DNA from: Vitrella brassicaformis CCMP3155
Lineage: Eukaryota > Protista > Chromerida
Direction: 5' to 3'
Length of the DNA: 64,000 nucleotides
Assembly: GCA_001179505.1 (NCBI GenBank)
Contig: CDMY01000488.1
Coordinates: 297,652-361,651 of the forward strand
Shown here one piece after another: positions 5,544 to 53,826 of this stretch. The notes beneath the pieces were generated by a model, which was given only the letters and a program-made list of their open reading frames with translations, ran no database searches and had not been told where the DNA came from. Position 1 is the stretch's first letter. Every line of letters begins with the position of its first letter. The position numbers and the translations under genes are program-made.

Positions 5544-7817
5544 TCACCTTACCTGACACACACGTCGACAGCCACAAGTCGGAGGGACAGACAGACAGAC
5601 AGACAGACACCATTGCGTACGTCTTGTCGGCACCGCCCGCTTGTGTCGGGAGTGGTTGATGCATACCTCGGCAGGAATGTCGGTTGACCTGCCGGTGTCT
5701 TGTCGAAGAGCTCCGCTGCGATGACTGGCCCCAGCACCAAACGCGCCAGCTGAGCGGTCTCTCGGAAGCGGTTCTGAAAGGTCCAGATCGGACCAATCAA
5801 CGGATCCCGATCCGGCTCGGTCGTCTCAGCTAAAACCTGCACTGCAGACGAATGACAGGACGGCACAGCAGATGAGTGTAAGTATTGCACCCTCTCTTGG
5901 TGAGCTGCGCTGTGCTGCGCTGACCGTAGGTGCCGATCCGTGATATCCGAAGCCAGGCGACGAATGGGTGGCTGGCGTCTGTCAGGACGAGACGACGCTC
6001 AAATATGCCGGTGGTAGGGCTGCAGAATGATGCGGTTGTACTGCAGCCCTCGACTGGTGTGTGGGGGGACTGCGACAGGATGGTGTTCAACAGCTGGTTC
6101 TCGTCCACACCCCTGCATGACCGATGAACAACACACCGATGTACTCACTCGGTTGTCGCAACGATGCCCACCCAGAGGGATGCCCGCCTTACCTTCCCAG
6201 CAGATGGAAAGTGAGAGTCGTCAAAGCCGATTGGGTCGACTTGAAATAGTCGAGGATCTTGTTCTTGACCAGCGACGACGCAGACGAGTAGTCACGAGGA
6301 AGATGCGACCGCCAGCCATGAGCGCCGTACACGATTGGGCTCCGGGTGGGTGGGTCGTGGTCCTGCCGATGCTGCTCGTAGAGGTGGTCGGGAGGGAGGG
6401 TCGGTTTGGTCGTCAGCTCGAAGCCATCCTGGTCCCGGATGGCCCGCACTGTGTGGCCGCGGTGGAACAACTGGAAGCTGATGTCGTTGCCGAAGTTGAT
6501 GTGGCGGCCGACCACCGTGAGCTGAGCCAACACACGCGGGAGGGCCAAATACACCTGCACACACAACACACGACCACGGCACACACACGGGGATTGCCAT
6601 TCATTCCTCCCTCCCTCCCTGGTCGGCTTACGCCTTTGTTTGGGAATTGGTGCAGGTCGGCCGAAGTGATCCTCACAGGCAGCTGGCAGATGCCACACTG
6701 CGCCGCCAGCGCAATCACCTCGCCCGTCTCCTCCCGCACGGCCGCCTCGGCCTCCGCCTCCGTCACACACACGGCGGCCAGCAGGCCACCCTCATCTATC
6801 TGGTCGTCGAATGTCAGCAGCTCCACCACATTCCCATTGACCGTCCGTCGCGGCAAGGGCTTTGTGCTGAGTGTGTGTCTGAGCCGCAGCCGCAGCTCAT
6901 CCACGCCGAAGAAGTCCCTCACCCAGCGGCAGGTTGCTCTGAGCTGCAGTATGTCCTCGGCCTGCAGCAGGAATGCGCTGCGCCGGCTGGCCGGGGAGGC
7001 TGCGGGCGGGACGCAAAGGTACCACAGGGAATGCCACAGCTGCTGCTGCTCCTGAGCAAGGCGTCAACGCAGCCACAAACAGAAGAGGGGGTGCCATCGA
7101 CGTCTGTGTGTGTCGTGTGCTGGCTGACCGACCCGGAAACGTTTCAGCCATCTCATGGCTAGGTAGCGACGGCAGCAGGATTGGATGTGTGTCTACGGGT
7201 GGGAAAAGGTCAACAAGGGGGTTGCTTCATGTGTGTGTGGACGAGCCAGGCCCAGCCGCTACCCGCTCACCGCCTTGTCGCATCTCCGTTTCTGTATGTC
7301 CTTGAGCTCCCTTTCGGATTTTGCCACTTGTCGCCCTTTGTAACCTTCATTTCACAGACAGACAGACAGACACAGACGTGGCGGTGCGGTCTCGGCTGTC
7401 TGTCTGACTGACCTCTGTAGAAGCTCTGTATCTTGAGTGCCTTTGGCGTCACGGCAGCCTCATAGGCGAGAAGGTCCTTCCGGTAGCGCTTTATTCTGCG
7501 GCTGAACAAGCCCCTGGCGCAACGCTGAATTGTGACCTGCACGGACCACCCAACAAACAAACACAGCAAACACACGGCCGCCCCCTTGACGTGTGTGAAG
7601 AGCCACTCGTCACGCCCCATCTCCCTCCACTGCTCACCGCAGCCAGGTCCCTGTCCATCACCGCCGTCATGCAGATCTGCCGAGAGCGGCAGATGGGCGA
7701 GATAGGAGGCGGCGGATGGCCTGACCGGAGAAGACGCGCTGTTGCTTGGTGTTGCTCGTCTGCTTGACAGGTGCGATGACCACCTGACACCTCAGGGGGT
7801 CGAGTCTGAGCTCGCAT
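5544..7817 (-). CDS. IQ-motif N-terminus fused to an uncharacterised C-terminal domain (probably a lineage-expanded family)
   Basis: ATG 7817 (MRAQTRPPEV). IQ exons are intact (GYKGRQVAK). They are followed by EQQQLWHSLW...LRATCRWVRDFFGVDELRLRL...LAQLTVVGRHINFG...SQSPHTPVEGC...LTDASHPFVAW...FQNRFRETAQLARLVLG, joined by canonical introns. The last exon and stop are tentative. Confidence 0.7.
7070..7671 (-). repeat. Segmental duplication, copy 2 of the IQ-exon module
   Basis: Aligns with 2835-3431 across both exons and introns. Confidence 0.95.
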
Positions 7818-44329: not shown

Positions 44330-46515
44330 GCATCGTACCCCGGTTTGCTTCTTGTCTTCCAGTTTGGTGGCATCTGAGTGCTCGATGATCCCAGCCGCCA
44401 GCATCTTGTCGAGCTTGTCCTCTAGCCTGACGAGCTGCTGGATGAGCTGCTGGATGAGGGGGGGATTGGCGGGCTGGGATGGTGTCGGTCGCGGTCAGAC
44501 ACGCGCACGACACCCCCACCAGGCCCGCTCTGCTCTCACTGTTGCATCAAAAACGGAAGCGGCGCAGGGCCGCCTCCTCCCTCTGCTTCGTTAGCTCCTC
44601 CAGCCTGGCCAAGGCCTCTGCCCTCTGCTGCTGGTGGCGAGCCCCAGGCAGGTCGCCACTCGGAGCGGCTTGGCGGGTTTGGTGGGCTTGGCGGCCATGG
44701 CGGGCCTGGTGGGCTTGGTAGTGGTGGGCTTAGCGGGCTTGGCGGCCTTAGCGGGCTTGGTGGTGGGGGGCTTGGCGGCGGGTTTGGTGGTGGTGGGCTT
44801 CTGCTTCAGCGTGCCCTCCCTCGCCCACTTCCGCATCAGACGAGCCAGCTCCGCGTCCCTGGTGGCTCTGGCTCTGGCGGCACCTGCCGCCATCTTCTCC
44901 GACTGCACAAGCAAGCACACGGGAACAGACAAAGGGAATGACCTTCCTGTCCTCGACCGCTGTTTGGTCCATCATTTTGTTACCTCTGCCCACATCCTGG
45001 CCTTCTCCTAGGGTGTCAGCCAGTTCGCTACCTCCTGATGGACAGACAGACAGAACACCGCACGCCGAGATTGAGAGGTGTGCTGCCATTCAATGCGTGT
45101 GCCGTCGCTCACCTCCTCAGTGAGCGGCTCGTAGCCAAACATGACATCGTCCCACTCTATACACTGGCAAGCCATCTCATAGGCCGACGTCATGGGGCCG
45201 TGCGCTTGTTCGATGGCCGCGAAGTGCTGCGCATTGACGTGCTCGATCTCCTCAGCCGTGCACGGGCGGAAGGTACCCACTCGCATGCCCTTTGGGAAGC
45301 GGGTCGTCTCTCCGTGAGGACACGCAGGGCGACCGTGCCGTCTGCTTGGACGCGGGCGATCCCTGCCTTGGGCAGCAGGAAGAGTGGGTGCCGACGCATC
45401 TCGTCAGGATAAAAGTAGCCAAGCGTCCCTGGACGGAGGCACTCTGCCTGCCGGCCGCCCTTCCCCTTGGTCGGCTTGGTGAGAGAGAAGGGGATGTCCA
45501 GCCACCCTGGCCCGTCCACCACTAGGGCCTCCTTGAAGCGCACCGGGTAGCTGTCGAGTGTGGCTCCATCCCATGGTGCCGGCTGAGGTGTCTCCCCTGT
45601 CGCCATGTGTGCGTGGGGTGGTGGGTCGATCCGCAGGGGCGGCACGCCTGTCGGCCGGGCGGAAGGGATGCTCCTCTGCCCGCCCGACTCATCATCTACA
45701 CCATCACAACTCCTCACTCCATCATGGGGCGCCTTCGCCCCGCCCTCGCAGGCCTCGCGGAAGAGGCCTGCCATGCCATCCACCACACTAGTCGCCCTGT
45801 CGCCCATGCTGTCGGGCCAGATGTCGGCTGCAGTCACCAATGTCAAGGTATCCGTCTGTCGATCGCTCGAGGTGGTGGGGTAGTCGTCCAGCAGCGCGTC
45901 GATGTCGTCTGTGTGTGCGTGGGGCCGCAGACATTCTCGGTATTCTGGATGCGTTGCCGAGCCATAGACGACTTCTTCGCGTGCCCAAGCAGGTCCATGC
46001 CGAAGATGACCGGGTGGTGCAGGTCTCGCACGACTCGGAAAGGCCAGCGTGACGTCTTGCGGCCCACAGACACGTCCGTCCAGAAACACCAACCCGACCA
46101 CCTCGAGCGCTTTGTTGGTCTGTCCCTCCGGCCGTATCAGCTGCCGAAGCGGTTGGAACCTCTCGATGAGCTCGGCGCGCTTGGACGGATGACGCAGGAC
46201 GATGTCGCGTAGGAATGGCATGCTGACGCATGTGATGCCTGCGCCCGTGCCGTCCAGGACGGCCAGCCCAGCTCCCCACTTGTTGCTCGATGTGGCTGCC
46301 TCCATTGCCTCGACAGCAGAACGATGGGCGATGGATGCGGCCATCTCGCGCATGGCGTCCGTCAGCATGTCGATGTTGTCGGATAGCCGCGGATCGTCTC
46401 GCACTCCAAGATGCTCTAGTCGATGCCTCCGACCCGCTGTCGAGCCTGGCCGCCGTGGTGATGCGGGCGGCTCGATCGTCGTACAACTCGAGGAAGCGCC
46501 TCCTCGCTTATCCAT
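44330..46515 (-). mobile_element. Degenerate Ty3/gypsy-like pol fragment: retropepsin, spacer and RT N-terminus
   Basis: Protease LAVLDGTGAGITCVS...(frameshift)...FRVVRDLHHPVIFGMDLL; spacer PKGMRVGTF; RT-start-like TDTIPARQSP...LDKMLAAGIIEHS. Several frameshifts and stops. No RT core, integrase or LTR pair found in the window. Confidence 0.7.
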
Positions 46516-46749: not shown

Positions 46750-47283
46750 AAAAAACCCTGGACCTCGGAAACCCTGCGAGCTCAGATTGCTGACTCTCCA
46801 ATTCTTCCCCCCCGATGAGACGGTGATGAAGGCACGGCAAGAAAGCTGAAGCCCATCAGCCGCGGAGTTTGTTGGTACCGTTGCTGAGTAGCGGCGCCTC
46901 AGCGGAGGGGACCGAAGCAGCGGGGAAACGGGGAAGGCCAGGACACCGCTGCAGCCACATATCTGCAGCTCAGCAACCACACAAAGGTGAGAACATACCT
47001 CCTTGATGCACTTGATTCGCCGCTCTCTTCTCATCTCATTATGTTCGTCTGATGGGTCTGCAGATGGGCGGGCAAGAGCATCGCAGCGACACGAGCAGCC
47101 CCGTGTACCACATGGCCCACACATCCTCGCCCAAGTCGTCGGCCTCCCGCCCCTCCACCCACTCCCCTCTCCCCCCCAGCCGCAGACCCGCATCCATCGC
47201 ATGGCTCAAGTGGGGCGGTCTCGTCGCCTCATGCGCCGTCATCTCCCTCTTTCTCACCTCTCAGCTGCTCTCCTTCCGCTCTT
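46750..47283 (+). repeat. Duplicated promoter, 5' intron and first exon of the glyco-enzyme array (paralog at 52820-53363; exon part also at 50361-50540)
   Basis: Near-identical from ggaaggccaggacaccgctgcagccac onward, more diverged further upstream. Confidence 0.95.
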
Positions 47284-50060
47284 GTGGCGACCCCTGTGAC
47301 GAAGACACTGAGGCAGAGGAGGCGCCGGACTGGTGGTCGAGGCTTGGCCAGGGGGAGTGGGGCGGCACATGGGGATGGAACCCATGGGGACCCAGGCGGG
47401 CGTTTCCATGGAAGGGCTATCCGCCAGTGGAGGAGCCGCCACCGGCCGAATTTGCCGCCGCTGTGAGTGGTGCTGAAGGGGCGCCCGTGACGACTTTCCC
47501 GACTGAATTCGACGAGAAGAAGCCATGGCGGTTTGCTCTCTGGAACTTGGGAGCGACTGAGATGGATGACTTGGTCGAGAGGCAGAAGGCCTCCATTCTC
47601 GCTATATATGAACAGGTAGGGGACGAAAGGCAGGGCTTACAGGCCTTCTGATGAGATCGCTGTGCTGTCTTGTCTTGTGTTGTGTGCAGGTGCTAGGTCC
47701 GTATAGGAACGGTTATGCTGCTTTAGTTGGGTTGGCTGACCATGAGAACAAAGGCGACTCGGCTATCAACTACGGAGAGTACCTCATACTCCAGGTCGGC
47801 ACCAGCGAACGACAAACCACACGCCCATTGTCCTCTGACCCATCTCGCTCCGTCTCTCTCTCTCTCTCCTTCTGTGTGTGTGTGTGTGTGTGTGCGTGTG
47901 ATGGATCGGCCAGCACTTCAACATAACGAGTGTCTATCACTGCAGCACCGGCGGGCTGGGCCCCTGCGACATGGACCAGATGGAGAGCGCCGTCCGCAGC
48001 GCTCCCAAGAACCTGGTCATCCTCTGCCACGGTGGAGGCAACTTTGGCGACATCTGGCGGCAGGACCCAGAGGTACACACACTCACCCACTCACTCACTC
48101 ACTCACTCACGAGCGCACCCAACACACACGCGACACGCGCACTGCCACGCCAGGCGTGATGTGACGTCCTGGTGTGTCTGTCTGTGCTGCTGCTATCAGT
48201 TGCGTGAGAGGGTTGTCGCCCGTTTCCTGGACTACGAGATCGTCGTCTTCCCTCAGAGCATCGCATTCACTGATGATGTAAGTCGACCTCCCACCCCAGC
48301 CCGCCCCTCCTCTCTGAACACAGACACTCGACTCTGTCTGTGTCTTTGTCTGTCGTGTGTCGATCCATCGATCAGCGTCAGCGATTGGCGCATGCCCGCC
48401 GTATGCGTCACCGCAGGATCACCTACCTCGTCCGCGACCACGCCTCGTACAAGTTCCTTGTCGACCCCGACAACGGCTTCCAATTCAAGAAGGCGATCCT
48501 GTGCCCCGACTCAGCTTTCATGATCGGCTCAAAGAGGCCGGGGTGGCCGAAGGACATTGACATCTTGTGGGTGCACCGGGGGGACCCCGAGCGGACCGAC
48601 ATCGCCATCCCCAAGGCGCCCGAGGGTGTGGTGATGGTGTCGGAGGACTGGCTCAACTACAAGAAGCTGTCCAAGGCAAACACCGTCAGCTGGCAGAAAT
48701 TCCAGCTCAACTTTTTCATGGACAAGTTCTCACACATGAGGGTCGACAGGGCCTTCTCGTTCCTTGCCAGAGCCAAGGTGCGGGAGGGAGGAATGGGGAT
48801 GGCCGGCTGGCTGTAAATGCGCATGTGGTGTGTGATGGTGTGTGACGCGTGTGTGTGTGTGCATCAGATTGTGGTGACGGAGCGGCTTCACGGTCACATT
48901 CTCTCGACCATGCTCGACACACCACACGTCGTCCTCGACAACAACTACGGGTGCGTACACATCAAACGACCCCCAGCATGCTCATCTGATGAGCCCACTC
49001 CTTCTGTTTGTTCGTTTGTTCGTTCTTCCGTGCAGCAAGATAAGGCACTACCGCGAGACGTGGACGGCCGGCCTCCGAGACGTCCTGGTCGCCAACAGCA
49101 CGGACAGCGCCCTCCAAAGCGCCCTCGTCCTGCTGAACCGGTACCAGCAGGACGAGAAGTCTCCCAAGGGCGGCCGCAACTCGTCGCCCTCAGACTTCAT
49201 TGTCAAGACGGGCAACCAGATGACGACCAAAAGGATGACCGTGCCCGGCAAAGGCAAGCCCACCCCCAAGAGGCCCCGGCCTTCACGCCAGTCGCCAGCC
49301 GGGCCCCAAGGAGATGGAGAGAGTCTGCGCGAGACGGCGGAGAGCCACATACGGCGGGAAGAGGAGGCGAAGGCCAAGAGGACGGCGGCAGCTGTGGAGA
49401 AGAGGAAGGCCGACGCTAAGTTCCGCGAGTGGCATCCTTTGCACATCTGCATGGCGGTGGACGGGGACGGCATCGAGCAGCTGCCGACTGTCCTCAACTC
49501 CATCCACAAGAGCAACGCCGACGACTTTGCGGCCGTGCACGTTCTCCACCGCGATGTCGACTCGGCAAAGAGGGGGATGGTCAACGCGCTGATCGACCGC
49601 TTTGAGGCCAATGGTAGGAGGCACATGGTCCTCGAGTGGGTCCGTGTGCCTGATCACTTCGCCCACTTTGACTCTTACAAGCAGCCGCACGACATGCCCC
49701 ATCTGAGCAAATCGCAGGCCACCATGTGGCGGCTGTTCACCCCCACCATGCTGCCCTTCCAGGACCGGCTGATCTTCCTCGACCTGGACGTCATTGTGGA
49801 CGGCCGGCTGCGGCCGCTGTGGGACCTCCCGCCGCAGCAGCACTGCGGCATATGGGCGCGGAGCTCCAAGACGCCCAAGGTCATCAACGACTGGCTGAAC
49901 GACACGGGCAGCTTCCCAGCGCTCAACTACACGGCTTCCCGATCGTTCAATGCGGGCGTGTTGGTGATGGATCTGTCGTGGCTGCGGGGCAACCATTTCG
50001 AGCCCTTTGCGAAGCGCTACATCAACGAGTACGGCGTGAACGACCAGATCATTCTCAACT
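47064..50060 (+). CDS. Type II membrane protein: polysaccharide pyruvyltransferase (PS_pyruv_trans) fused to a GT8 glycosyltransferase (array copy 1; 3' end lies in the gap)
   Basis: TM segment WGGLVASCAVISLFLTSQLL. Pyruvyltransferase motifs HENKGDSAI, LCHGGGNFGDIW, FPQSI, LVRDHAS, CPDSAF and VVTERLHGHILSTMLDTPHVVLDNNYGKI. The same exon (from about 49037) continues into GT8 motifs RLIFLDLDVIV, FNAGVLVMDL and NDQIILN. Confidence 0.9.
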
Positions 50061-50360
50061 NNNNNNNNNNNNNNNNNNNNNNNNNNNNNNNNNNNNNNNN
50101 NNNNNNNNNNNNNNNNNNNNNNNNNNNNNNNNNNNNNNNNNNNNNNNNNNNNNNNNNNNNNNNNNNNNNNNNNNNNNNNNNNNNNNNNNNNNNNNNNNNN
50201 NNNNNNNNNNNNNNNNNNNNNNNNNNNNNNNNNNNNNNNNNNNNNNNNNNNNNNNNNNNNNNNNNNNNNNNNNNNNNNNNNNNNNNNNNNNNNNNNNNNN
50301 NNNNNNNNNNNNNNNNNNNNNNNNNNNNNNNNNNNNNNNNNNNNNNNNNNNNNNNNNNNN
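50061..50360. other. Assembly gap (300 N) inside the tandem array
   Basis: Run of N between array copies 1 and 2. Confidence 1.
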
Positions 50361-51614
50361 GCCCACACATCCTCGCCCAAGTCGTCGGCCTCCCGCCCCT
50401 CCACCCACTCCCCTCTCCCCCCCAGCCGCAGACCCGCATCCATCGCATGGCTCAAGTGGGGCGGTCTCGTCGCCTCATGCGCCGTCATCTCCCTCTTTCT
50501 CACCTCTCAGCTGCTCTTCTTCCGCTCTTGTGGCGACTCATGTGTCCGCGAGTGGCATCCTTTGCACATCTGCATGGCCGTGGACGGGGACGGCATCGAG
50601 CAGCTGCCGACTGTCCTCAACTCCATCCACAAGAGCAACGCCGACGACTTTGCGGCCGTGCACGTTCTCCACCGCGATGTCGACTCGGCAAAGAGGGGGA
50701 TGGTCAACGCGCTGATCGACCGCTTTGAGGCCAATGGTAGGAGGCACATGGTCCTCGAGTGGGTCCGTGTGCCTGATCACTTCGCCCACTTTGACTCTTA
50801 CAAGCAGCCGCACGACATGCCCCATCTGAGCAAATCGCAGGCCACCATGTGGCGGCTGTTCACCCCCACCATGCTGCCCTTCCAGGACCGGCTGATCTTC
50901 CTCGACCTGGACGTCATTGTGGACGGCCGGCTGCGGCCGCTGTGGGACCTCCCGCCGCAGCAGCACTGCGGCATATGGGCGCGGAGCTCCAAGACGCCCA
51001 AGGTCATCAACGACTGGCTGAACGACACGGGCAGCTTCCCAGCGCTCAACTACACGGCTTCCCGATCGTTCAATGCGGGCGTGTTGGTGATGGATCTGTC
51101 GTGGCTGCGGGGCAACCATTTCGAGCCCTTTGCGAAGCGCTACATCAACGAGTACGGCGTGAACGACCAGATCATTCTCAACTGCTACTGCGACGGCAAA
51201 TATGGAGAGCTGCCGCCGCAATACAACGCCTTCGTTGGTGAGATGGAAATGGGAGGGCTCATGAGTTGTGGACTCACTCGTCTGTCTGGCTGTGTGTATG
51301 TGCATATTCCAGGTTCGTCGAGCAAGAGGGACACGGCACTGGGCAGCAAGGCGCCCATCGTCCTGCACTTCGCTGGCAGACGGAAGCCGTGGAACAACCA
51401 GGACGGGAAGCCACTTGAGTTCCAGGTCAGAAGCTGAGCATCGACTCAGCGACCAGAGCCATGCACCTCCTCTCCCTGTCTGTTTGTGTGTTGATGAATG
51501 CAGAGCAAGTGGGATGAGTATCAGTTGGAGCTGCGGCCTCTGAGTGACGATGAGAGGTCCCAGCCGCTGGCCCCAATGCCTGACGGGCTTCCGCGGCACA
51601 TGCGAATAGGTTGA
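50361..51614 (+). CDS. GT8 glycosyltransferase, array copy 2: TM anchor joined directly to GT8, with no pyruvyltransferase domain (start lies in the gap)
   Basis: In-frame ...FLTSQLLFFRSCGDSCVREWHPLHICMAVD...; DLD, FNAGV, DQIILN and HFAGRRKPW motifs; two 3' introns; stop TGA at 51612-51614. Confidence 0.85.
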
Positions 51615-53142
51615 GATCGGCAGAGGGGTCGCTCACTCCCGTCCTTACTTGAGCACGAAGGCGCCAACTCCTGCGGCGTTCCTGCGGCGCGAACAGGTGC
51701 TCTCGGCGCTGATGACAGACGGAGTGCCAACGTGCTCTCCTTGCGCTGGTTTGCTGGTCACCCAATGCATCAGCGCCCTCACGATCTTCCGCTTCTCCCT
51801 CACTGCTGTCATCCATCACCTCGTCGGCCACGGCAGAAGTGTCCAGTTGTTGGTCGACGAGCCAGCGGATCACTTCTCATGATCTCCCGCGAGAAATCAG
51901 GAAACGTGAGGCTCTTGACCCGCTTTTTTCGCTTCGCTTGTGGCCTTCAGGATGGCGTCCTCTTGGTCTCTCTCACCGTCTCCCTGCTCAACGGGTGCAG
52001 CTGGTGAGTAATATGAGTTCGTCCACTATGTAGAGCGGATGGGTCTTGTCCTCTCGTTTTATGGACGAGAGGATACCAGGGCGTGACAATGCTGTAGCCG
52101 TCAACACCACAAACACTGCAAGCAGACAGGCAGACAGGCATGCAAGAGGGATAATGCGCCACAGGCAGACAGGGGCAATGAACGCTGTCTGGACGCGAGT
52201 GAGGTGCGCTGTCTGCCCTATCTGTCTTGTTCCTGCTTTTTTCTTCCCATCGCTTCCTACCTACCTATATTGATGCTGACATCATGAATCAATGATGACA
52301 GCCGTGACTTTTACCTTTCTGCAAGGTCAACTTCACTTGTTCATAGAAAGTGTCAGCTGTCTGCTCCTTGCCTGCACTGCCAGCGCAGCCACTTTTTGTG
52401 TTGTTGCCTCGAGTGGGCAGTGAGTGGTGCACCCTTGTACAGCTGTGAGGGGGCGGGTGCCTTGTCGTGTGGGCGGATGGATGGATGGATGTGTGGACAC
52501 GGCAATCGCATGAATGGATGGATGGATGGACACCTGTGGCCACAGAGGGTGGTGTGGTGGTGTCATCCATCGGTCGACTGAAACTCTGTGTGTGCCTTGC
52601 GATGAAAAAGCTGTGATTCAATCCAAGAAGCTGGCAGTCTGGTCAAAGAAGCTGGCTTCTGTACTCATGCATACAGCTTTCGTGGACGTTTTCCACCTCC
52701 GCAAGGGTCGCCTGCTGCCCTGTTGTGATATATTAATGGCGAGGCAATTGGTCGGTGAAGAGGAGGCGTTACTCGGGTGGACATCCAAGCGTGGTCCGTG
52801 GCGGGAGCCGCACCCCAGCAAACCCTGCACCCCAAGCAAACCCTGCGCGCTCAGATTGCTCACTCTCCAATTCTTCTCTCCTGATGAGACGGTCATGAAG
52901 GCACGGCAAGAAAGGTGAAGCCCATCAGCTGCGGAGTTTGTTGGTCGCGTTGCTGAGTAGCGGCGTCTCAGAACGGAGGATCAAAGCGGACCGAAGCGGT
53001 GAGGAAACGGGGAAGGCCAGGACACCGCTGCAGCCACATATCTGCAGCTCAGCAACCACACAAAGGTGAGAACATACCTCCTTGATGCACTTGATTCGCC
53101 GCTCTCTTCTCATCTCATTATGTTCGTCTGATGGGTCTGCAG

Positions 53143-53826
53143 ATGGGCGGGCAAGAGCATCGCAGCGACACGAGCAGCCCCGTGTACCACATGGCCCACA
53201 CATCCTCGCCCAAGTCGTCGGCCTCCCGCCCCTCCACCCACTCCCCTCTCCCCCCCAGCCGCAGACCCGCATCCATCGCATGGCTCAAGTGGGGCGGTCT
53301 CGTCGCCTCATGCGCCGTCATCTCCCTCTTTCTCACCTCTCAGCTGCTCTCCTTCCGCTCTTGNNNNNNNNNNNNNNNNNNNNNNNNNNNNNNNNNNNNN
53401 NNNNNNNNNNNNNNNNNNNNNNNNNNNNNNNNNNNNNNNNNNNNNNNNNNNNNNNNNNNNNNNNNNNNNNNNNNNNNNNNNNNNNNNNNNNNNNNNNNNN
53501 NNNNNNNNNNNNNNNNNNNNNNNNNNNNNNNNNNNNNNNNNNNNNNNNNNNNNNNNNNNNNNNNNNNNNNNNNNNNNNNNNNNNNNNNNNNNNNNNNNNN
53601 NNNNNNNNNNNNNNNNNNNNNNNNNNNNNNNNNNNNNNNNNNNNNNNNNNNNNNNNNNNNNNNGTTTGTGTGTTGATGAATGCAGAGCAAGTGGGATGAG
53701 TATCAGTTGGAGCTGCGGCCTCTGAGTGACGATGAGAGGTCCCAGCCGCTGGCTCCAATGCCGCCCGGGCTGGCCATCGCAGTGCCTCAGACGCAGGGCA
53801 ACTCCAAGCCAGAGGTGTGGGTGTGA
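53143..53826 (+). CDS. Array copy 3: N-terminal TM exon and last exon of the same family; middle hidden in the gap
   Basis: MGGQEH...FLTSQLLSFRS matches copy 1. After the gap, SKWDEYQLELRPLSDDERSQPLAPMPPGLAIAVPQTQGNSKPEVWV* has a different tail from copy 2. Confidence 0.75.
53364..53663. other. Assembly gap (300 N); true size probably larger
   Basis: Flanked by the first and last exons of a gene whose paralogs span more than 300 bp between those points. Confidence 1.

What the first reader, a model, noticed from the sequence alone, without database searches (positions are those of the whole stretch)
47064..50060. Pyruvyltransferase-GT8 fusion: candidate Golgi enzyme for pyruvylated glycans in an alveolate alga
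One ORF joins a type II membrane anchor, a complete polysaccharide pyruvyltransferase domain and a GT8 domain; the two catalytic domains meet within a single exon. The pyruvyltransferase family includes bacterial EpsI-type enzymes and fission-yeast Pvg1p. Ketal-pyruvylation is mainly known from bacterial polysaccharides, S. pombe N-glycans and some seaweed galactans. A bifunctional enzyme could add a sugar (GT8 members often transfer Gal, Glc or GalA) and cap it with pyruvate, giving an anionic wall or surface glycan. I know of no description of this fusion or of pyruvylated glycans in chromerids. This is the strongest candidate for a new system in the window.
Basis: partly seen in the sequence, partly recalled or inferred. 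Interest (0 to 1): 0.8.

Follow-up and report, generated by a model that had tools for sequence, protein, structure and literature searches.

The report
Pyruvyltransferase–GT8 fusion enzyme gene in Vitrella
The alga really has an expressed gene that joins a yeast-type enzyme which caps sugars with pyruvate to a sugar-adding enzyme, but similar two-enzyme fusions are already common in public sequence data, so it is a new variant rather than a new kind.

Summary
Window 47064-50060 is a seven-exon gene encoding a type II membrane anchor, a complete Pvg1-type pyruvyltransferase (PvT) domain, a roughly 90-residue linker and a GT8 domain. PvT and GT8 meet in exon 7. Spliced RNA contigs from two studies confirm every intron and cross the PvT-to-GT8 boundary. 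An MMETSP transcript gives the complete 903-aa protein. Proposed catalytic residues of both domains are present.

Corrections:
- The GT8 domain is cut by an N gap, and the gene's last exon lies at 53686-53826.
- The locus probably holds two genes, not three: the fusion, and a paralog that lost the PvT module by an in-frame deletion of about 2.1 kb. The scaffold is probably mis-ordered.
- The public 1113-aa model CEM17423.1 bridges the gap artificially.

Novelty is overstated. 67 of the 149 nearest GT8 relatives also carry a PvT domain of a different subfamily, on giant-virus and crAss-like phage contigs and in an Ostreococcus transcriptome. The Vitrella PvT module is sister to the PvT of a Vitrella transporter-PvT fusion, so this fusion arose independently. 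I found no functional study. Bifunctional Golgi pyruvylation is inferred, not shown. The scan already noted this stretch (s1-209585) and other PvT fusions in this genome.

The parts
46909..46986 (+). 5'UTR exon (A-up copy) spliced to the coding exon
   Evidence: RNA joint 46984->47062 (cut +2), GT..AG, in X6 and X8. In X8 the letters upstream of 46909 match the other copy, C-up 52958-52987, exactly.
47064..47615 (+). Coding exon 1: cytosolic tail, signal anchor (about 47199-47279, residues 46-72), low-confidence stem, start of the PvT domain
   Evidence: Translation matches P0001. Hydropathy peak. AF2 helix 51-69. Splice joint 47615/47690.
47690..48950 (+). Exons 2-6 (47690-47794, 47914-48072, 48200-48277, 48376-48777, 48868-48950): core of the Pvg1-type pyruvyltransferase domain
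   Evidence: Spliced RNA contig X6 record 17 and X8 records 20 and 21. PF04230 at E 2.9e-22 on P0001. Pvg1p 5AX7 at E 4.8e-35.
49036..49156 (+). Exon 7, first part: C-terminal helices of the PvT domain (residues 460-500)
   Evidence: Alignment to Pvg1p runs to residue 469. AF2 pLDDT is above 90 up to about residue 500.
49157..49432 (+). Exon 7, linker (residues about 501-592): a Lys/Arg/Pro/Ser-rich disordered stretch, then a long helix (554-592)
   Evidence: Composition. AF2 pLDDT is below 50 for 508-552, and helix 554-592 is predicted.
49433..50060 (+). Exon 7, GT8 domain N-terminal two thirds (residues 593-801, DxD at 709-711), cut by the gap. From 49422 on it is 638/639 identical to the paralog at 50545-51183.
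   Evidence: PF01501 at E 3.9e-15. One mismatch, at 49456. X8 RNA contig 49127-49827 crosses the boundary unbroken.
50061..50360 (.). Assembly gap (300 N)
50361..51614 (+). Paralog B: the same anchor exon joined in frame at 50545 directly to GT8 (exons 50361-51237, 51313-51425, 51504-51614 including the stop). It has no PvT module.
   Evidence: PF01501 at E 1.4e-19. The joint 47298->49422 is present in DNA runs X1 and X4 and in RNA run X6.
52838..53363 (+). C-up: second promoter/5'UTR copy plus exon 1 (ATG 53143), cut by the second gap. This is the probable true 5' end of the fusion gene.
   Evidence: 94.7% identical to 46753-47284. X8 RNA contig 19 links the C-up-type UTR to 47424. P0001 residues 1-73 map at 100%.
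53364..53663 (.). Second assembly gap (300 N). The body of the fusion gene probably belongs here.
   Evidence: Inference.
53686..53826 (+). Last exon and stop codon of the fusion gene (P0001 residues 858-903)
   Evidence: tblastn gives 100% over residues 857-903. The P0001 C-terminus differs from that of paralog B.

Best explanation
This is a real, expressed gene of Vitrella brassicaformis for a protein of about 903 aa. The protein is a single-pass type II membrane protein.

Domain layout, in order:
- a short cytosolic tail;
- a signal anchor at residues about 51-69;
- a low-complexity stem;
- a Pvg1-type ketal-pyruvyltransferase domain (about 165-500);
- a roughly 90-residue linker, disordered and then one long helix;
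- a GT8 (GT-A, retaining, DxD/Mn-type) glycosyltransferase domain (about 593-870).

Most likely working (inferred): both domains face the lumen of the secretory pathway, probably the Golgi. GT8 uses a UDP-sugar to add an alpha-linked hexose to a glycan. The PvT domain uses phosphoenolpyruvate to put a ketal pyruvate on a terminal Gal-like residue of the same glycan. The result is an anionic, possibly chain-ending, cap.

The PvT module was duplicated within the Vitrella lineage; its sister is the PvT of a TPT-transporter-PvT fusion. It was then joined to a GT8, independently of the PvT-GT8 fusions seen in giant viruses, phages and green picoalgae.

Beside the fusion lies a very recent paralog that lost the PvT module and linker through an in-frame genomic deletion (507 codons, about 2.1 kb including six introns). 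This paralog is also expressed. The true locus is probably two genes: an A-up promoter driving anchor-GT8, then a C-up promoter driving the fusion. The window's scaffold has put the body of the fusion behind the wrong promoter copy.
For: Shown:
- Exon structure and transcription. Spliced contigs of X6 and X8 remove the introns of the model. X6 record 17 runs 47242->49451. X8 record 22 runs 49127-49827 across the linker/GT8 boundary.
- Full-length transcripts. MMETSP transcripts encode the 903-aa ORF and an 860-aa isoform that retains the last intron.
- The junction exists in DNA. X1 record 6 (48122-49451) and X4 record 13 carry it.
- Domains. PF04230 at 80 bits and PF01501 at 92 bits. Pvg1p 5AX7 matches at E 4.8e-35 over chain residues 40-316. 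Foldseek ranks 5AX7 first (TMt 0.82), then LgtC (0.73), WbbM, GlyE and LARGE1. AF2 pLDDT is about 90 in both domains.
- Catalytic residues. Pvg1p D106/R217/R337 (PMC4872226) correspond to D207/R318/R438, which are conserved here and in the 14 relatives wherever the extracted domain reaches the position. GT8 has LDLDV at 707-711, aligned to the LgtC DxD, and HFAGRRKPW at 838, aligned to the GlyE HxxxxxKPW.
- Secretory features. The flanking charges fit a type II orientation. There are five N-x-S/T sequons, all C-terminal to the anchor.
- Precedent. Pvg1p is a type II Golgi protein supplied with PEP by the Pet1p/Pet2p transporters (PMC4872226). Vitrella has a TPT-PvT fusion, P0151, whose PvT is sister to this one with support 99/95.
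- Two-gene layout. In DNA run X1 the depths are: exon 1 = 40, GT8 = 41.5, A path = 22, B joint = 21, A-up = 24. P0001 ends with the exon at 53686-53826. X8 contig 19 joins the C-up UTR to the PvT-specific sequence.
Against: - No biochemical, localisation or glycan data exist.
- The donor sugar, the acceptor, the order of the two reactions, and whether they act on one glycan at all are unknown.
- The residue at the Pvg1p H168 specificity position is Asp here, so the acceptor may differ from that of Pvg1p.
- GT8 enzymes make alpha linkages. In the work cited here Pvg1p was assayed with beta-lactoside and asialo-glycopeptide acceptors.
- Contigs cannot show that each mRNA molecule runs through both domains; that rests on de novo transcript assemblies and k-mer graphs.
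- The two-gene layout rests on contig depths. It also rests on one RNA run labelled as a different organism code (X8) and on a transcriptome assembly.
- The window's own contig joins A-up to the PvT path without a gap.
Confidence: 0.6

Rival explanations
1. The fusion is an assembly or annotation chimera. A stand-alone PvT gene and a stand-alone anchor-GT8 gene were joined through the repeated GT8/exon-1 sequence.
For: The region has two N gaps and near-identical repeats. The public 1113-aa model CEM17423.1 is indeed an artefact that bridges the gap and duplicates GT8. The window's GT8 segment looks like a mosaic of the two copies: G at 49456, but C and T at 49547 and 49615, where X8 and X4 have T and C.
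Against: The PvT-linker-to-GT8 junction at 49421/49422 has unique sequence on its left. It is carried by independent DNA contigs (X1, X4), by RNA contigs (X6), and unbroken over 700 nt in X8. It is also in two MMETSP transcripts with one open frame. The frame is open with no stop between the domains.
Confidence: 0.03
2. The fusion is real, but the two domains do not cooperate on one glycan, or one of them is a non-catalytic or binding module. Tethering would then only co-localise two independent activities, or the gene is a transient product of local domain shuffling.
For: The locus is in flux: a recent paralog lost PvT. The PvT module combines with many partners, namely TPT, GT31/Fringe, PF03407, GT2 and GT8. 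This could reflect simple co-localisation. The placement of GT8 in the tree is unresolved.
Against: Catalytic residues of both domains are intact. The same functional pairing has arisen with a second, unrelated PvT subfamily in at least 67 other proteins and in both domain orders. That argues for selection on the pairing. Both forms are expressed.
Confidence: 0.2
3. It is a polysaccharide (wall or mucilage) synthase with a built-in terminator rather than a glycoprotein-glycan capping enzyme. GT8 would extend a polymer, and the PvT, held at a distance by the helical linker, would cap and stop it. This resembles Klebsiella WbbY with WbbZ.
For: WbbZ pyruvylation of terminal Gal terminates O1 polymerisation in vitro (PMC10629545). 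WbbM and LARGE1, both polymerising enzymes with GT8 modules, are among the fold matches. A 39-residue helix precedes GT8.
Against: There is only one GT module, whereas known polymerases of this kind have two. No polymer is known from Vitrella that would fit. The PvT is closest to Pvg1p, which caps N-glycans.
Confidence: 0.15

Closest known systems
Schizosaccharomyces pombe Pvg1p (PDB 5AX7), Golgi galactose pyruvyltransferase
   Same: It is type II anchored with a GT-B-like PvT fold. The sequence match is E 4.8e-35 and the fold match TM 0.82. D106, R217 and R337 are conserved. It uses PEP as donor and lies in a PEP-transporter-dependent Golgi pathway.
   Different: Pvg1p is a single-domain protein of 401 aa. 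Here a GT8 domain follows on the same chain. The H168 position is Asp. Activity is untested.
GT8 retaining glycosyltransferases (Neisseria LgtC 1G9R, S. pneumoniae GlyE 5GVV, Klebsiella WbbM 6U4B)
   Same: PF01501 matches over its full length. The DxD and C-terminal HxxxxxKPW motifs are present. The fold match has TMt 0.73.
   Different: This one is eukaryotic, membrane-anchored and C-terminal to a PvT. Identity is 16-20%. The donor sugar is unknown.
LARGE1 (GT8 + GT49), a bifunctional type II Golgi enzyme
   Same: It is a type II anchor with two luminal catalytic domains, one of them GT8, that act in turn on one glycan. It appears among the fold matches.
   Different: The second domain here is a pyruvyltransferase, not a second glycosyltransferase. 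There is no evidence of polymerisation.
PvT-GT8 and methyltransferase-PvT-GT8 proteins of giant viruses, crAss-like phages and Ostreococcus (for example P0015, P0010 and the P0020 cluster)
   Same: They share the Pfam pairing PF04230 + PF01501. Their GT8 domains fall in the same well-supported GT8 clade of 94 rows.
   Different: Their PvT is a different subfamily: its HMM scores only 12 bits on the Vitrella PvT. Most lack a Pvg1-like sequence. Some have the reverse domain order. All are uncharacterised as far as I could find.
Vitrella TPT-PvT fusion (CEL96597.1, P0151) and Cryptosporidium ubiquitum GT31/Fringe-PvT (P0161)
   Same: They have the same Pvg1-type PvT subfamily with conserved D/R/R. 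P0151's PvT is the sister of this one, with support 99/95.
   Different: The partner domain is a transporter or a GT31, not GT8.
Klebsiella O1 WbbY (two-GT polymerase) with WbbZ pyruvyltransferase
   Same: A glycosyltransferase and a PEP-dependent PvT act on the same chain end, and pyruvate caps terminal Gal (PMC10629545).
   Different: These are separate bacterial cytoplasmic proteins. The ketal is 3,4-linked. No close sequence relation was tested.

Membership tests
Polysaccharide pyruvyl transferase, PF04230 (Pvg1p-type) | Profile match above Pfam's gathering score over the whole domain | tested here: met
   P0001 residues 225-458 score 80.3 bits against a cut-off of 25.3, E 2.9e-22. Single exons alone fall below the cut-off.
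Polysaccharide pyruvyl transferase, PF04230 (Pvg1p-type) | Homology and fold match to the solved Pvg1p structure | tested here: met
   phmmer against 5AX7 gives E 4.8e-35 over chain residues 40-316. Foldseek ranks it first at E 3.6e-20, TMt 0.82.
Polysaccharide pyruvyl transferase, PF04230 (Pvg1p-type) | [quoted passage not shown] | tested here: met
   They align to D207, R318 and R438. H168, a specificity residue that is not catalytic, is Asp270 here.
Polysaccharide pyruvyl transferase, PF04230 (Pvg1p-type) | PEP-dependent ketal-pyruvyl transfer to a sugar | not testable with these tools
   This needs an enzyme assay.
Glycosyltransferase family 8, PF01501 | Profile match above the gathering score over the full length | tested here: met
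   P0001 residues 596-848 match profile positions 1-251 of 253 at 91.7 bits against a cut-off of 24.3. In the window itself only positions 1-189 are present before the gap.
Glycosyltransferase family 8, PF01501 | DxD metal/nucleotide-sugar motif and C-terminal His motif | tested here: met
   LDLDV at 707-711 aligns to LgtC LDIDV. HFAGRRKPW at 838 aligns to GlyE HYISQDKPW.
Glycosyltransferase family 8, PF01501 | GT-A fold | tested here: met
   AF2 pLDDT is about 90. Foldseek matches LgtC at TMt 0.73 and 3TZT at 0.80.
Type II Golgi glycan-modifying enzyme | A single N-terminal signal anchor with the catalytic domains on the C-terminal (luminal) side | tested here: met
   There is one hydrophobic segment at residues 53-71 and an AF2 helix at 51-69. 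Basic residues lie before it and acidic residues after it. The sequons lie only C-terminal to it.
Type II Golgi glycan-modifying enzyme | Golgi localisation | not testable with these tools
   Inferred from Pvg1p (PMC4872226) only.
PvT-GT8 fusions of giant viruses, phages and green picoalgae ('PvT-II' type) | PvT domain of the same subfamily | tested here: not met
   An HMM of 75 PvT-II domains scores 12.3 bits on P0001, only at the TxRLH motif. phmmer with the Vitrella PvT finds none of them.
PvT-GT8 fusions of giant viruses, phages and green picoalgae ('PvT-II' type) | GT8 domain in the same clade | tested here: inconclusive
   The query lies inside the 94-row clade (support 100), but its position within is unresolved. 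A clade with the alveolate stand-alone GT8s is not rejected (p-AU 0.23).

The most novel reading that the evidence does not exclude
Myzozoan alveolates (chromerids and Cryptosporidium) run a Golgi ketal-pyruvylation pathway like that of fission yeast. Three 'Rosetta-stone' fusions would spell out the pathway: TPT transporter-PvT for PEP import, GT31/Fringe-PvT, and this PvT-GT8 for sugar addition plus capping. In Vitrella, the expressed tandem pair of a fusion and a PvT-deleted copy would tune how much of one glycan carries the negative cap.
Probability: 0.4. Interest if true: 0.65.

Novelty: new variant of a known kind. Interest (0 to 1): 0.45.

Why it matters
Ketal pyruvylation of eukaryotic glycans is understood enzymatically only in fission yeast. 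This is a verified, expressed Pvg1-type enzyme covalently tied to a glycosyltransferase. Together with sister fusions to a putative PEP-type transporter and, in Cryptosporidium, to a GT31, it gives a concrete and testable prediction. The prediction is that chromerids and some apicomplexans make pyruvate-capped, anionic surface or wall glycans. It also names the proteins to express and assay. The fusion partner narrows the search for the acceptor sugar.

The work also corrects the public gene model and the scaffold at this locus. In addition, it shows that the PvT+GT8 pairing has been assembled at least twice from different PvT subfamilies, which argues that the pairing is functionally meaningful.

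Tried and rejected
- Single exons in Pfam gave only a sub-threshold PF04230 hit (exon 5, 16 bits). Exon 5 alone found nothing in the PDB. The joined public protein was needed.
- I first read the locus as a three-gene array (A, B, C). I dropped that reading because DNA depth shows two copies of exon 1 and of GT8, the transcript ends with the 'C' exon, and its UTR is C-up.
- I tried to place the GT8 domain by phylogeny with a quick and a careful tree. The placement is unresolved, and an AU test does not reject a clade with the alveolate GT8s.
- NCBIfam gave only a weak CsaB hit of 25 bits against a cut-off of 213.
- The TPT part of P0151 found no solved structure.
- Literature searches found no description of the fusion and no pyruvylation in chromerids or Cryptosporidium. 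The terms were pyruvyltransferase with GT8; PF04230; pyruvyl transferase with Ostreococcus or Micromonas; and pyruvyl with Vitrella, Chromera or Cryptosporidium.
- A bacterial promoter/terminator scan is irrelevant to a eukaryote and is ignored.
- The joint 48353->48841 and the loose ends at 48861 in the DNA runs rest on 21 letters of GT-rich microsatellite. I take them as spurious.
- Read laying was given 3,161 letters.
Full report
**What is in the window**

ORF listing and reading of 46900-51700 give a seven-exon + strand gene with GT..AG introns. The exons are 47064-47615, 47690-47794, 47914-48072, 48200-48277, 48376-48777, 48868-48950 and 49036-50060. The last of these runs into a 300-N assembly gap at 50061-50360.

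Directly after the gap, 50361-50544 repeats the anchor part of exon 1 at 98% identity. At 50545 it is joined in frame to a copy of the GT8 segment 49422-50060, with 638 of 639 bases identical. This copy continues through two more exons to a stop at 51614.

A third copy of the upstream region and exon 1 lies at 52838-53363. A second 300-N gap follows (53364-53663), and then a last exon with a different C-terminus.

**Domains**

Single exons give only weak Pfam hits. An all-against-all HMMER search with exon 7 returned P0001, a 903-aa public protein. It is identical to my window model over all 801 residues before the gap, except H631Y.
- P0001 matches PF04230 at 80 bits (E 2.9e-22) and PF01501 at 92 bits (E 7.4e-26). 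Both are well above the curated cut-offs.
- The PvT part matches fission-yeast Pvg1p (PDB 5AX7) at E 4.8e-35 over chain residues 40-316.
- The three residues proposed as catalytic in Pvg1p are D106, R217 and R337 (PMC4872226). They align to D207, R318 and R438, which are conserved in the 14 nearest PvT relatives wherever the extracted domain reaches the position.
- The Pvg1p specificity residue H168 is Asp here.
- The GT8 part has LDLDV aligned to the DxD motif of LgtC. It has HFAGRRKPW aligned to the equivalent motif of GlyE.
- An AF2 model built on a 34-row alignment has pLDDT of about 90 in both domains. Residues 508-552 are disordered, residues 554-592 form one long helix, and a helix at 51-69 corresponds to the membrane anchor.
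- Foldseek ranks Pvg1p first (TMt 0.82), followed by LgtC (0.73), WbbM, GlyE and LARGE1.
- The only strongly hydrophobic segment is at residues 53-71. Basic residues lie before it, acidic residues after it, and all five N-glycosylation sequons are C-terminal to it. This gives a type II orientation.

**Transcription and reality of the junction**

I laid the contigs of four public runs from four studies on 46900-50060.
- X6 and X8 are RNA, because their contigs lack the introns at exactly the predicted GT..AG sites.
- They also reveal a 5'UTR intron at 46987-63.
- X6 record 17 is one spliced contig from 47242 to 49451. That is 30 nt past the point where the repeat begins, which is where a k-mer graph must break.
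- X8 record 22 runs unbroken over 49127-49827 across the linker/GT8 boundary.
- X1 and X4 keep the introns, so they are DNA, and they carry the same junction (X1 record 6, X4 record 13).
- In X6 the depth of the shared GT8 (77) is at least the sum of the two paths that enter it (28 and 31). Fusion transcripts therefore do not stop before GT8.
- P0001 is an MMETSP transcript ORF marked complete. A sister transcript, P0198 (860 aa), retains the last intron.

The refutation criteria "transcripts ending between the domains" and "no PS_pyruv_trans hit" are thus not met.

**The locus is not as scaffolded**

- The direct anchor-to-GT8 joint (47298->49422) is present in DNA runs X1 and X4 and in RNA run X6. 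The PvT-less paralog is therefore genomic and expressed.
- In DNA run X1 the depths are: upstream A = 24, exon 1 = 40, PvT path = 22, direct joint = 21, PvT-to-GT8 path = 25, shared GT8 = 41.5. That means two copies of exon 1 and of GT8, not the three exon-1 copies in the scaffold.
- P0001 ends with the exon at 53686-53826, at 100% identity. It does not end with the paralog's last exon.
- In X8, one RNA contig joins a 5'UTR to PvT-specific sequence up to 47424. The unmatched letters of that UTR occur only at 52958-52987, in the 'C-up' copy.
- The window's GT8 segment also looks like a mosaic of the two copies. It has the fusion's G at 49456 but the paralog's letters at 49547 and 49615, where X8 RNA and an X4 DNA contig have T and C. 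The T at 49547 is what gives Y631 in P0001.

My reading, at about 0.65 confidence, is two genes. The first is A-up + anchor + GT8, ending at 51614. The second is C-up + anchor + PvT + linker + GT8, ending at 53826. On this reading the segment 47272-50060 belongs in the second gap.

The public genome model CEM17423.1 (A0A0G4FRX3, 1113 aa) splices across the first gap and so carries one and two-thirds GT8 domains. It is an artefact. Its presence in the same 90% identity cluster identifies the organism as Vitrella brassicaformis CCMP3155.

**Direction of change**

The paralog lacks 507 codons and six introns between non-splice positions. It keeps the frame and is otherwise more than 98% identical at the DNA level. 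The nearest other PvT in the databases is only about 40% identical (38% by BLASTP). A recent deletion in a duplicated fusion gene is therefore more parsimonious than a recent insertion. This is inference.

**Is the architecture new?**

No. Of the 149 other best GT8 hits, 67 carry a PvT-like domain found with an HMM I built iteratively.
- Pfam confirms PF04230 above its cut-off in P0006, P0007, P0009, P0010, P0020 and P0027. It is just below the cut-off in P0011, P0015 and P0016.
- Many of these proteins have an N-terminal methyltransferase, and a few have GT8 before PvT.
- One (P0015) lies beside an NCLDV major capsid gene.
- One (P0010) lies among crAss-like phage ring and muzzle genes.
- One (P0174) lies on a gene-dense 83-kb contig with ubiquitin/U-box and ankyrin genes.
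- The P0020 cluster contains an Ostreococcus sp. RCC789 MMETSP transcript.

Their PvT belongs to a different subfamily. The HMM scores 12 bits on the Vitrella protein, only at the TxRLH motif. phmmer with the Vitrella PvT finds none of them.

The Vitrella PvT is instead sister (support 99/95) to the PvT of a Vitrella TPT-transporter-PvT fusion, CEL96597.1. It sits within a clade of such fusions (support 94/96, just below the starred level), near a Cryptosporidium ubiquitum GT31/Fringe-PvT protein.

The GT8 domain falls inside a well-supported clade of 94 sequences in which fused and unfused GT8s are mixed. Its exact place is unresolved. A clade with the stand-alone Vitrella and Cryptosporidium GT8s is not rejected (p-AU 0.23).

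So the Vitrella fusion is an independent, lineage-specific assembly of a pairing that has been made elsewhere from other parts.

**Literature**

No paper in the searchable library holds both "pyruvyltransferase" and "glycosyltransferase family 8". None of the papers listed for "pyruvyl" combined with Vitrella, Chromera or Cryptosporidium holds the word pyruvyl. The pyruvylation review (PMC6801904) lists eukaryotic pyruvylated glycans only from S. pombe, red and green seaweeds, a sponge and a sea hare. It does not use the words fusion or bifunctional.

The S. pombe work establishes that Pvg1p is a type II Golgi enzyme fed by the PEP transporters Pet1p and Pet2p. The Klebsiella O1 work shows a PvT capping terminal Gal and stopping a GT polymerase in vitro (PMC10629545).

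**How it most likely works**

Shown: one expressed polypeptide with an N-terminal anchor and two intact-looking catalytic domains.

Inferred:
- luminal Golgi location;
- GT8 adding an alpha-linked hexose from a UDP-sugar;
- the PvT adding a ketal pyruvate from PEP to a terminal Gal-like residue of the same glycan;
- PEP supplied by TPT-type carriers, one of which is itself fused to the sister PvT;
- the PvT-less paralog making the uncapped version.

The order of the two reactions, the sugars involved and the carrier glycan are unknown.

**Verdict**

It is a new variant of a known kind, of moderate interest.

Earlier notes of this scan on the same genome describe this stretch as a tandem array (s1-209585). 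They also describe other PvT fusions and clusters (s1-221632, s1-233269, s1-252828, s1-231158). I re-derived the first two points independently. The others were not tested here.

Noticed in passing
window 47064-51614; public protein P0197 (CEM17423.1 / A0A0G4FRX3): The public 1113-aa genome model splices across the 300-N gap. It takes fusion residues 1-798 and then the paralog's anchor tail and whole GT8, which gives a partly duplicated GT8. The MMETSP transcript product (903 aa) is the correct protein.
   Followed up: yes
window 46769-47298, 50361-50544, 52838-53363; gaps 50061-50360 and 53364-53663: The scaffold has three copies of the promoter/exon-1 block, but DNA depth supports two. The scaffold probably places the fusion gene's body behind the wrong copy.
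   Followed up: partly
P0151 (Vitrella CEL96597.1, another contig); P0152-P0155: These proteins join a TPT-family transporter (PF03151) to a Pvg1-type PvT, in Vitrella and in several environmental sequences. The PvT of the Vitrella one is sister to the PvT studied here. It is a candidate PEP importer tied to the enzyme.
   Followed up: partly
P0161 (Cryptosporidium ubiquitum XP_028874404.1), P0158, P0162: These are GT31/Fringe-PvT fusions, and one has GT31 + PvT + PF03407. They include an annotated 'galactosyltransferase' of a Cryptosporidium species. From memory, S. pombe uses a separate GT31 (Pvg3p) to make the Pvg1p acceptor, so this would be the same pair fused.
   Followed up: no
L005:8001-10607 (next to Capsid_NCLDV at 5990-7387); L004:8001-9743 (among crAss ring/muzzle genes); L002:8001-10769: Methyltransferase-PvT-GT8 and PvT-GT8 proteins are encoded on giant-virus and crAss-like phage contigs. 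This suggests viral glycans with pyruvate caps.
   Followed up: partly
window 49456, 49547, 49615: Three positions distinguish the two GT8 copies, and the window's first copy is a mosaic of them. The C>T change at 49547 turns His631 into Tyr in the transcript.
   Followed up: partly
window 51426-51503 (paralog B's copy of the last intron); P0198: A second MMETSP transcript (860 aa) retains the last intron and ends ...EFQVRS.
   Followed up: partly
runs X10, X14-X20: Marine sediment metagenomes hold 7-63% of the sampled words of this stretch. This suggests that Vitrella or a very close relative is present in those samples.
   Followed up: no
window 45190-46515 (- strand): A 441-aa open frame directly upstream on the opposite strand has no Pfam match.
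   Followed up: partly
window 47860-47900, 48075-48110, 48841-48861: GT- and CACT-rich microsatellites inside introns cause contig breaks and one spurious joint (48353->48841) in the DNA runs.
   Followed up: no
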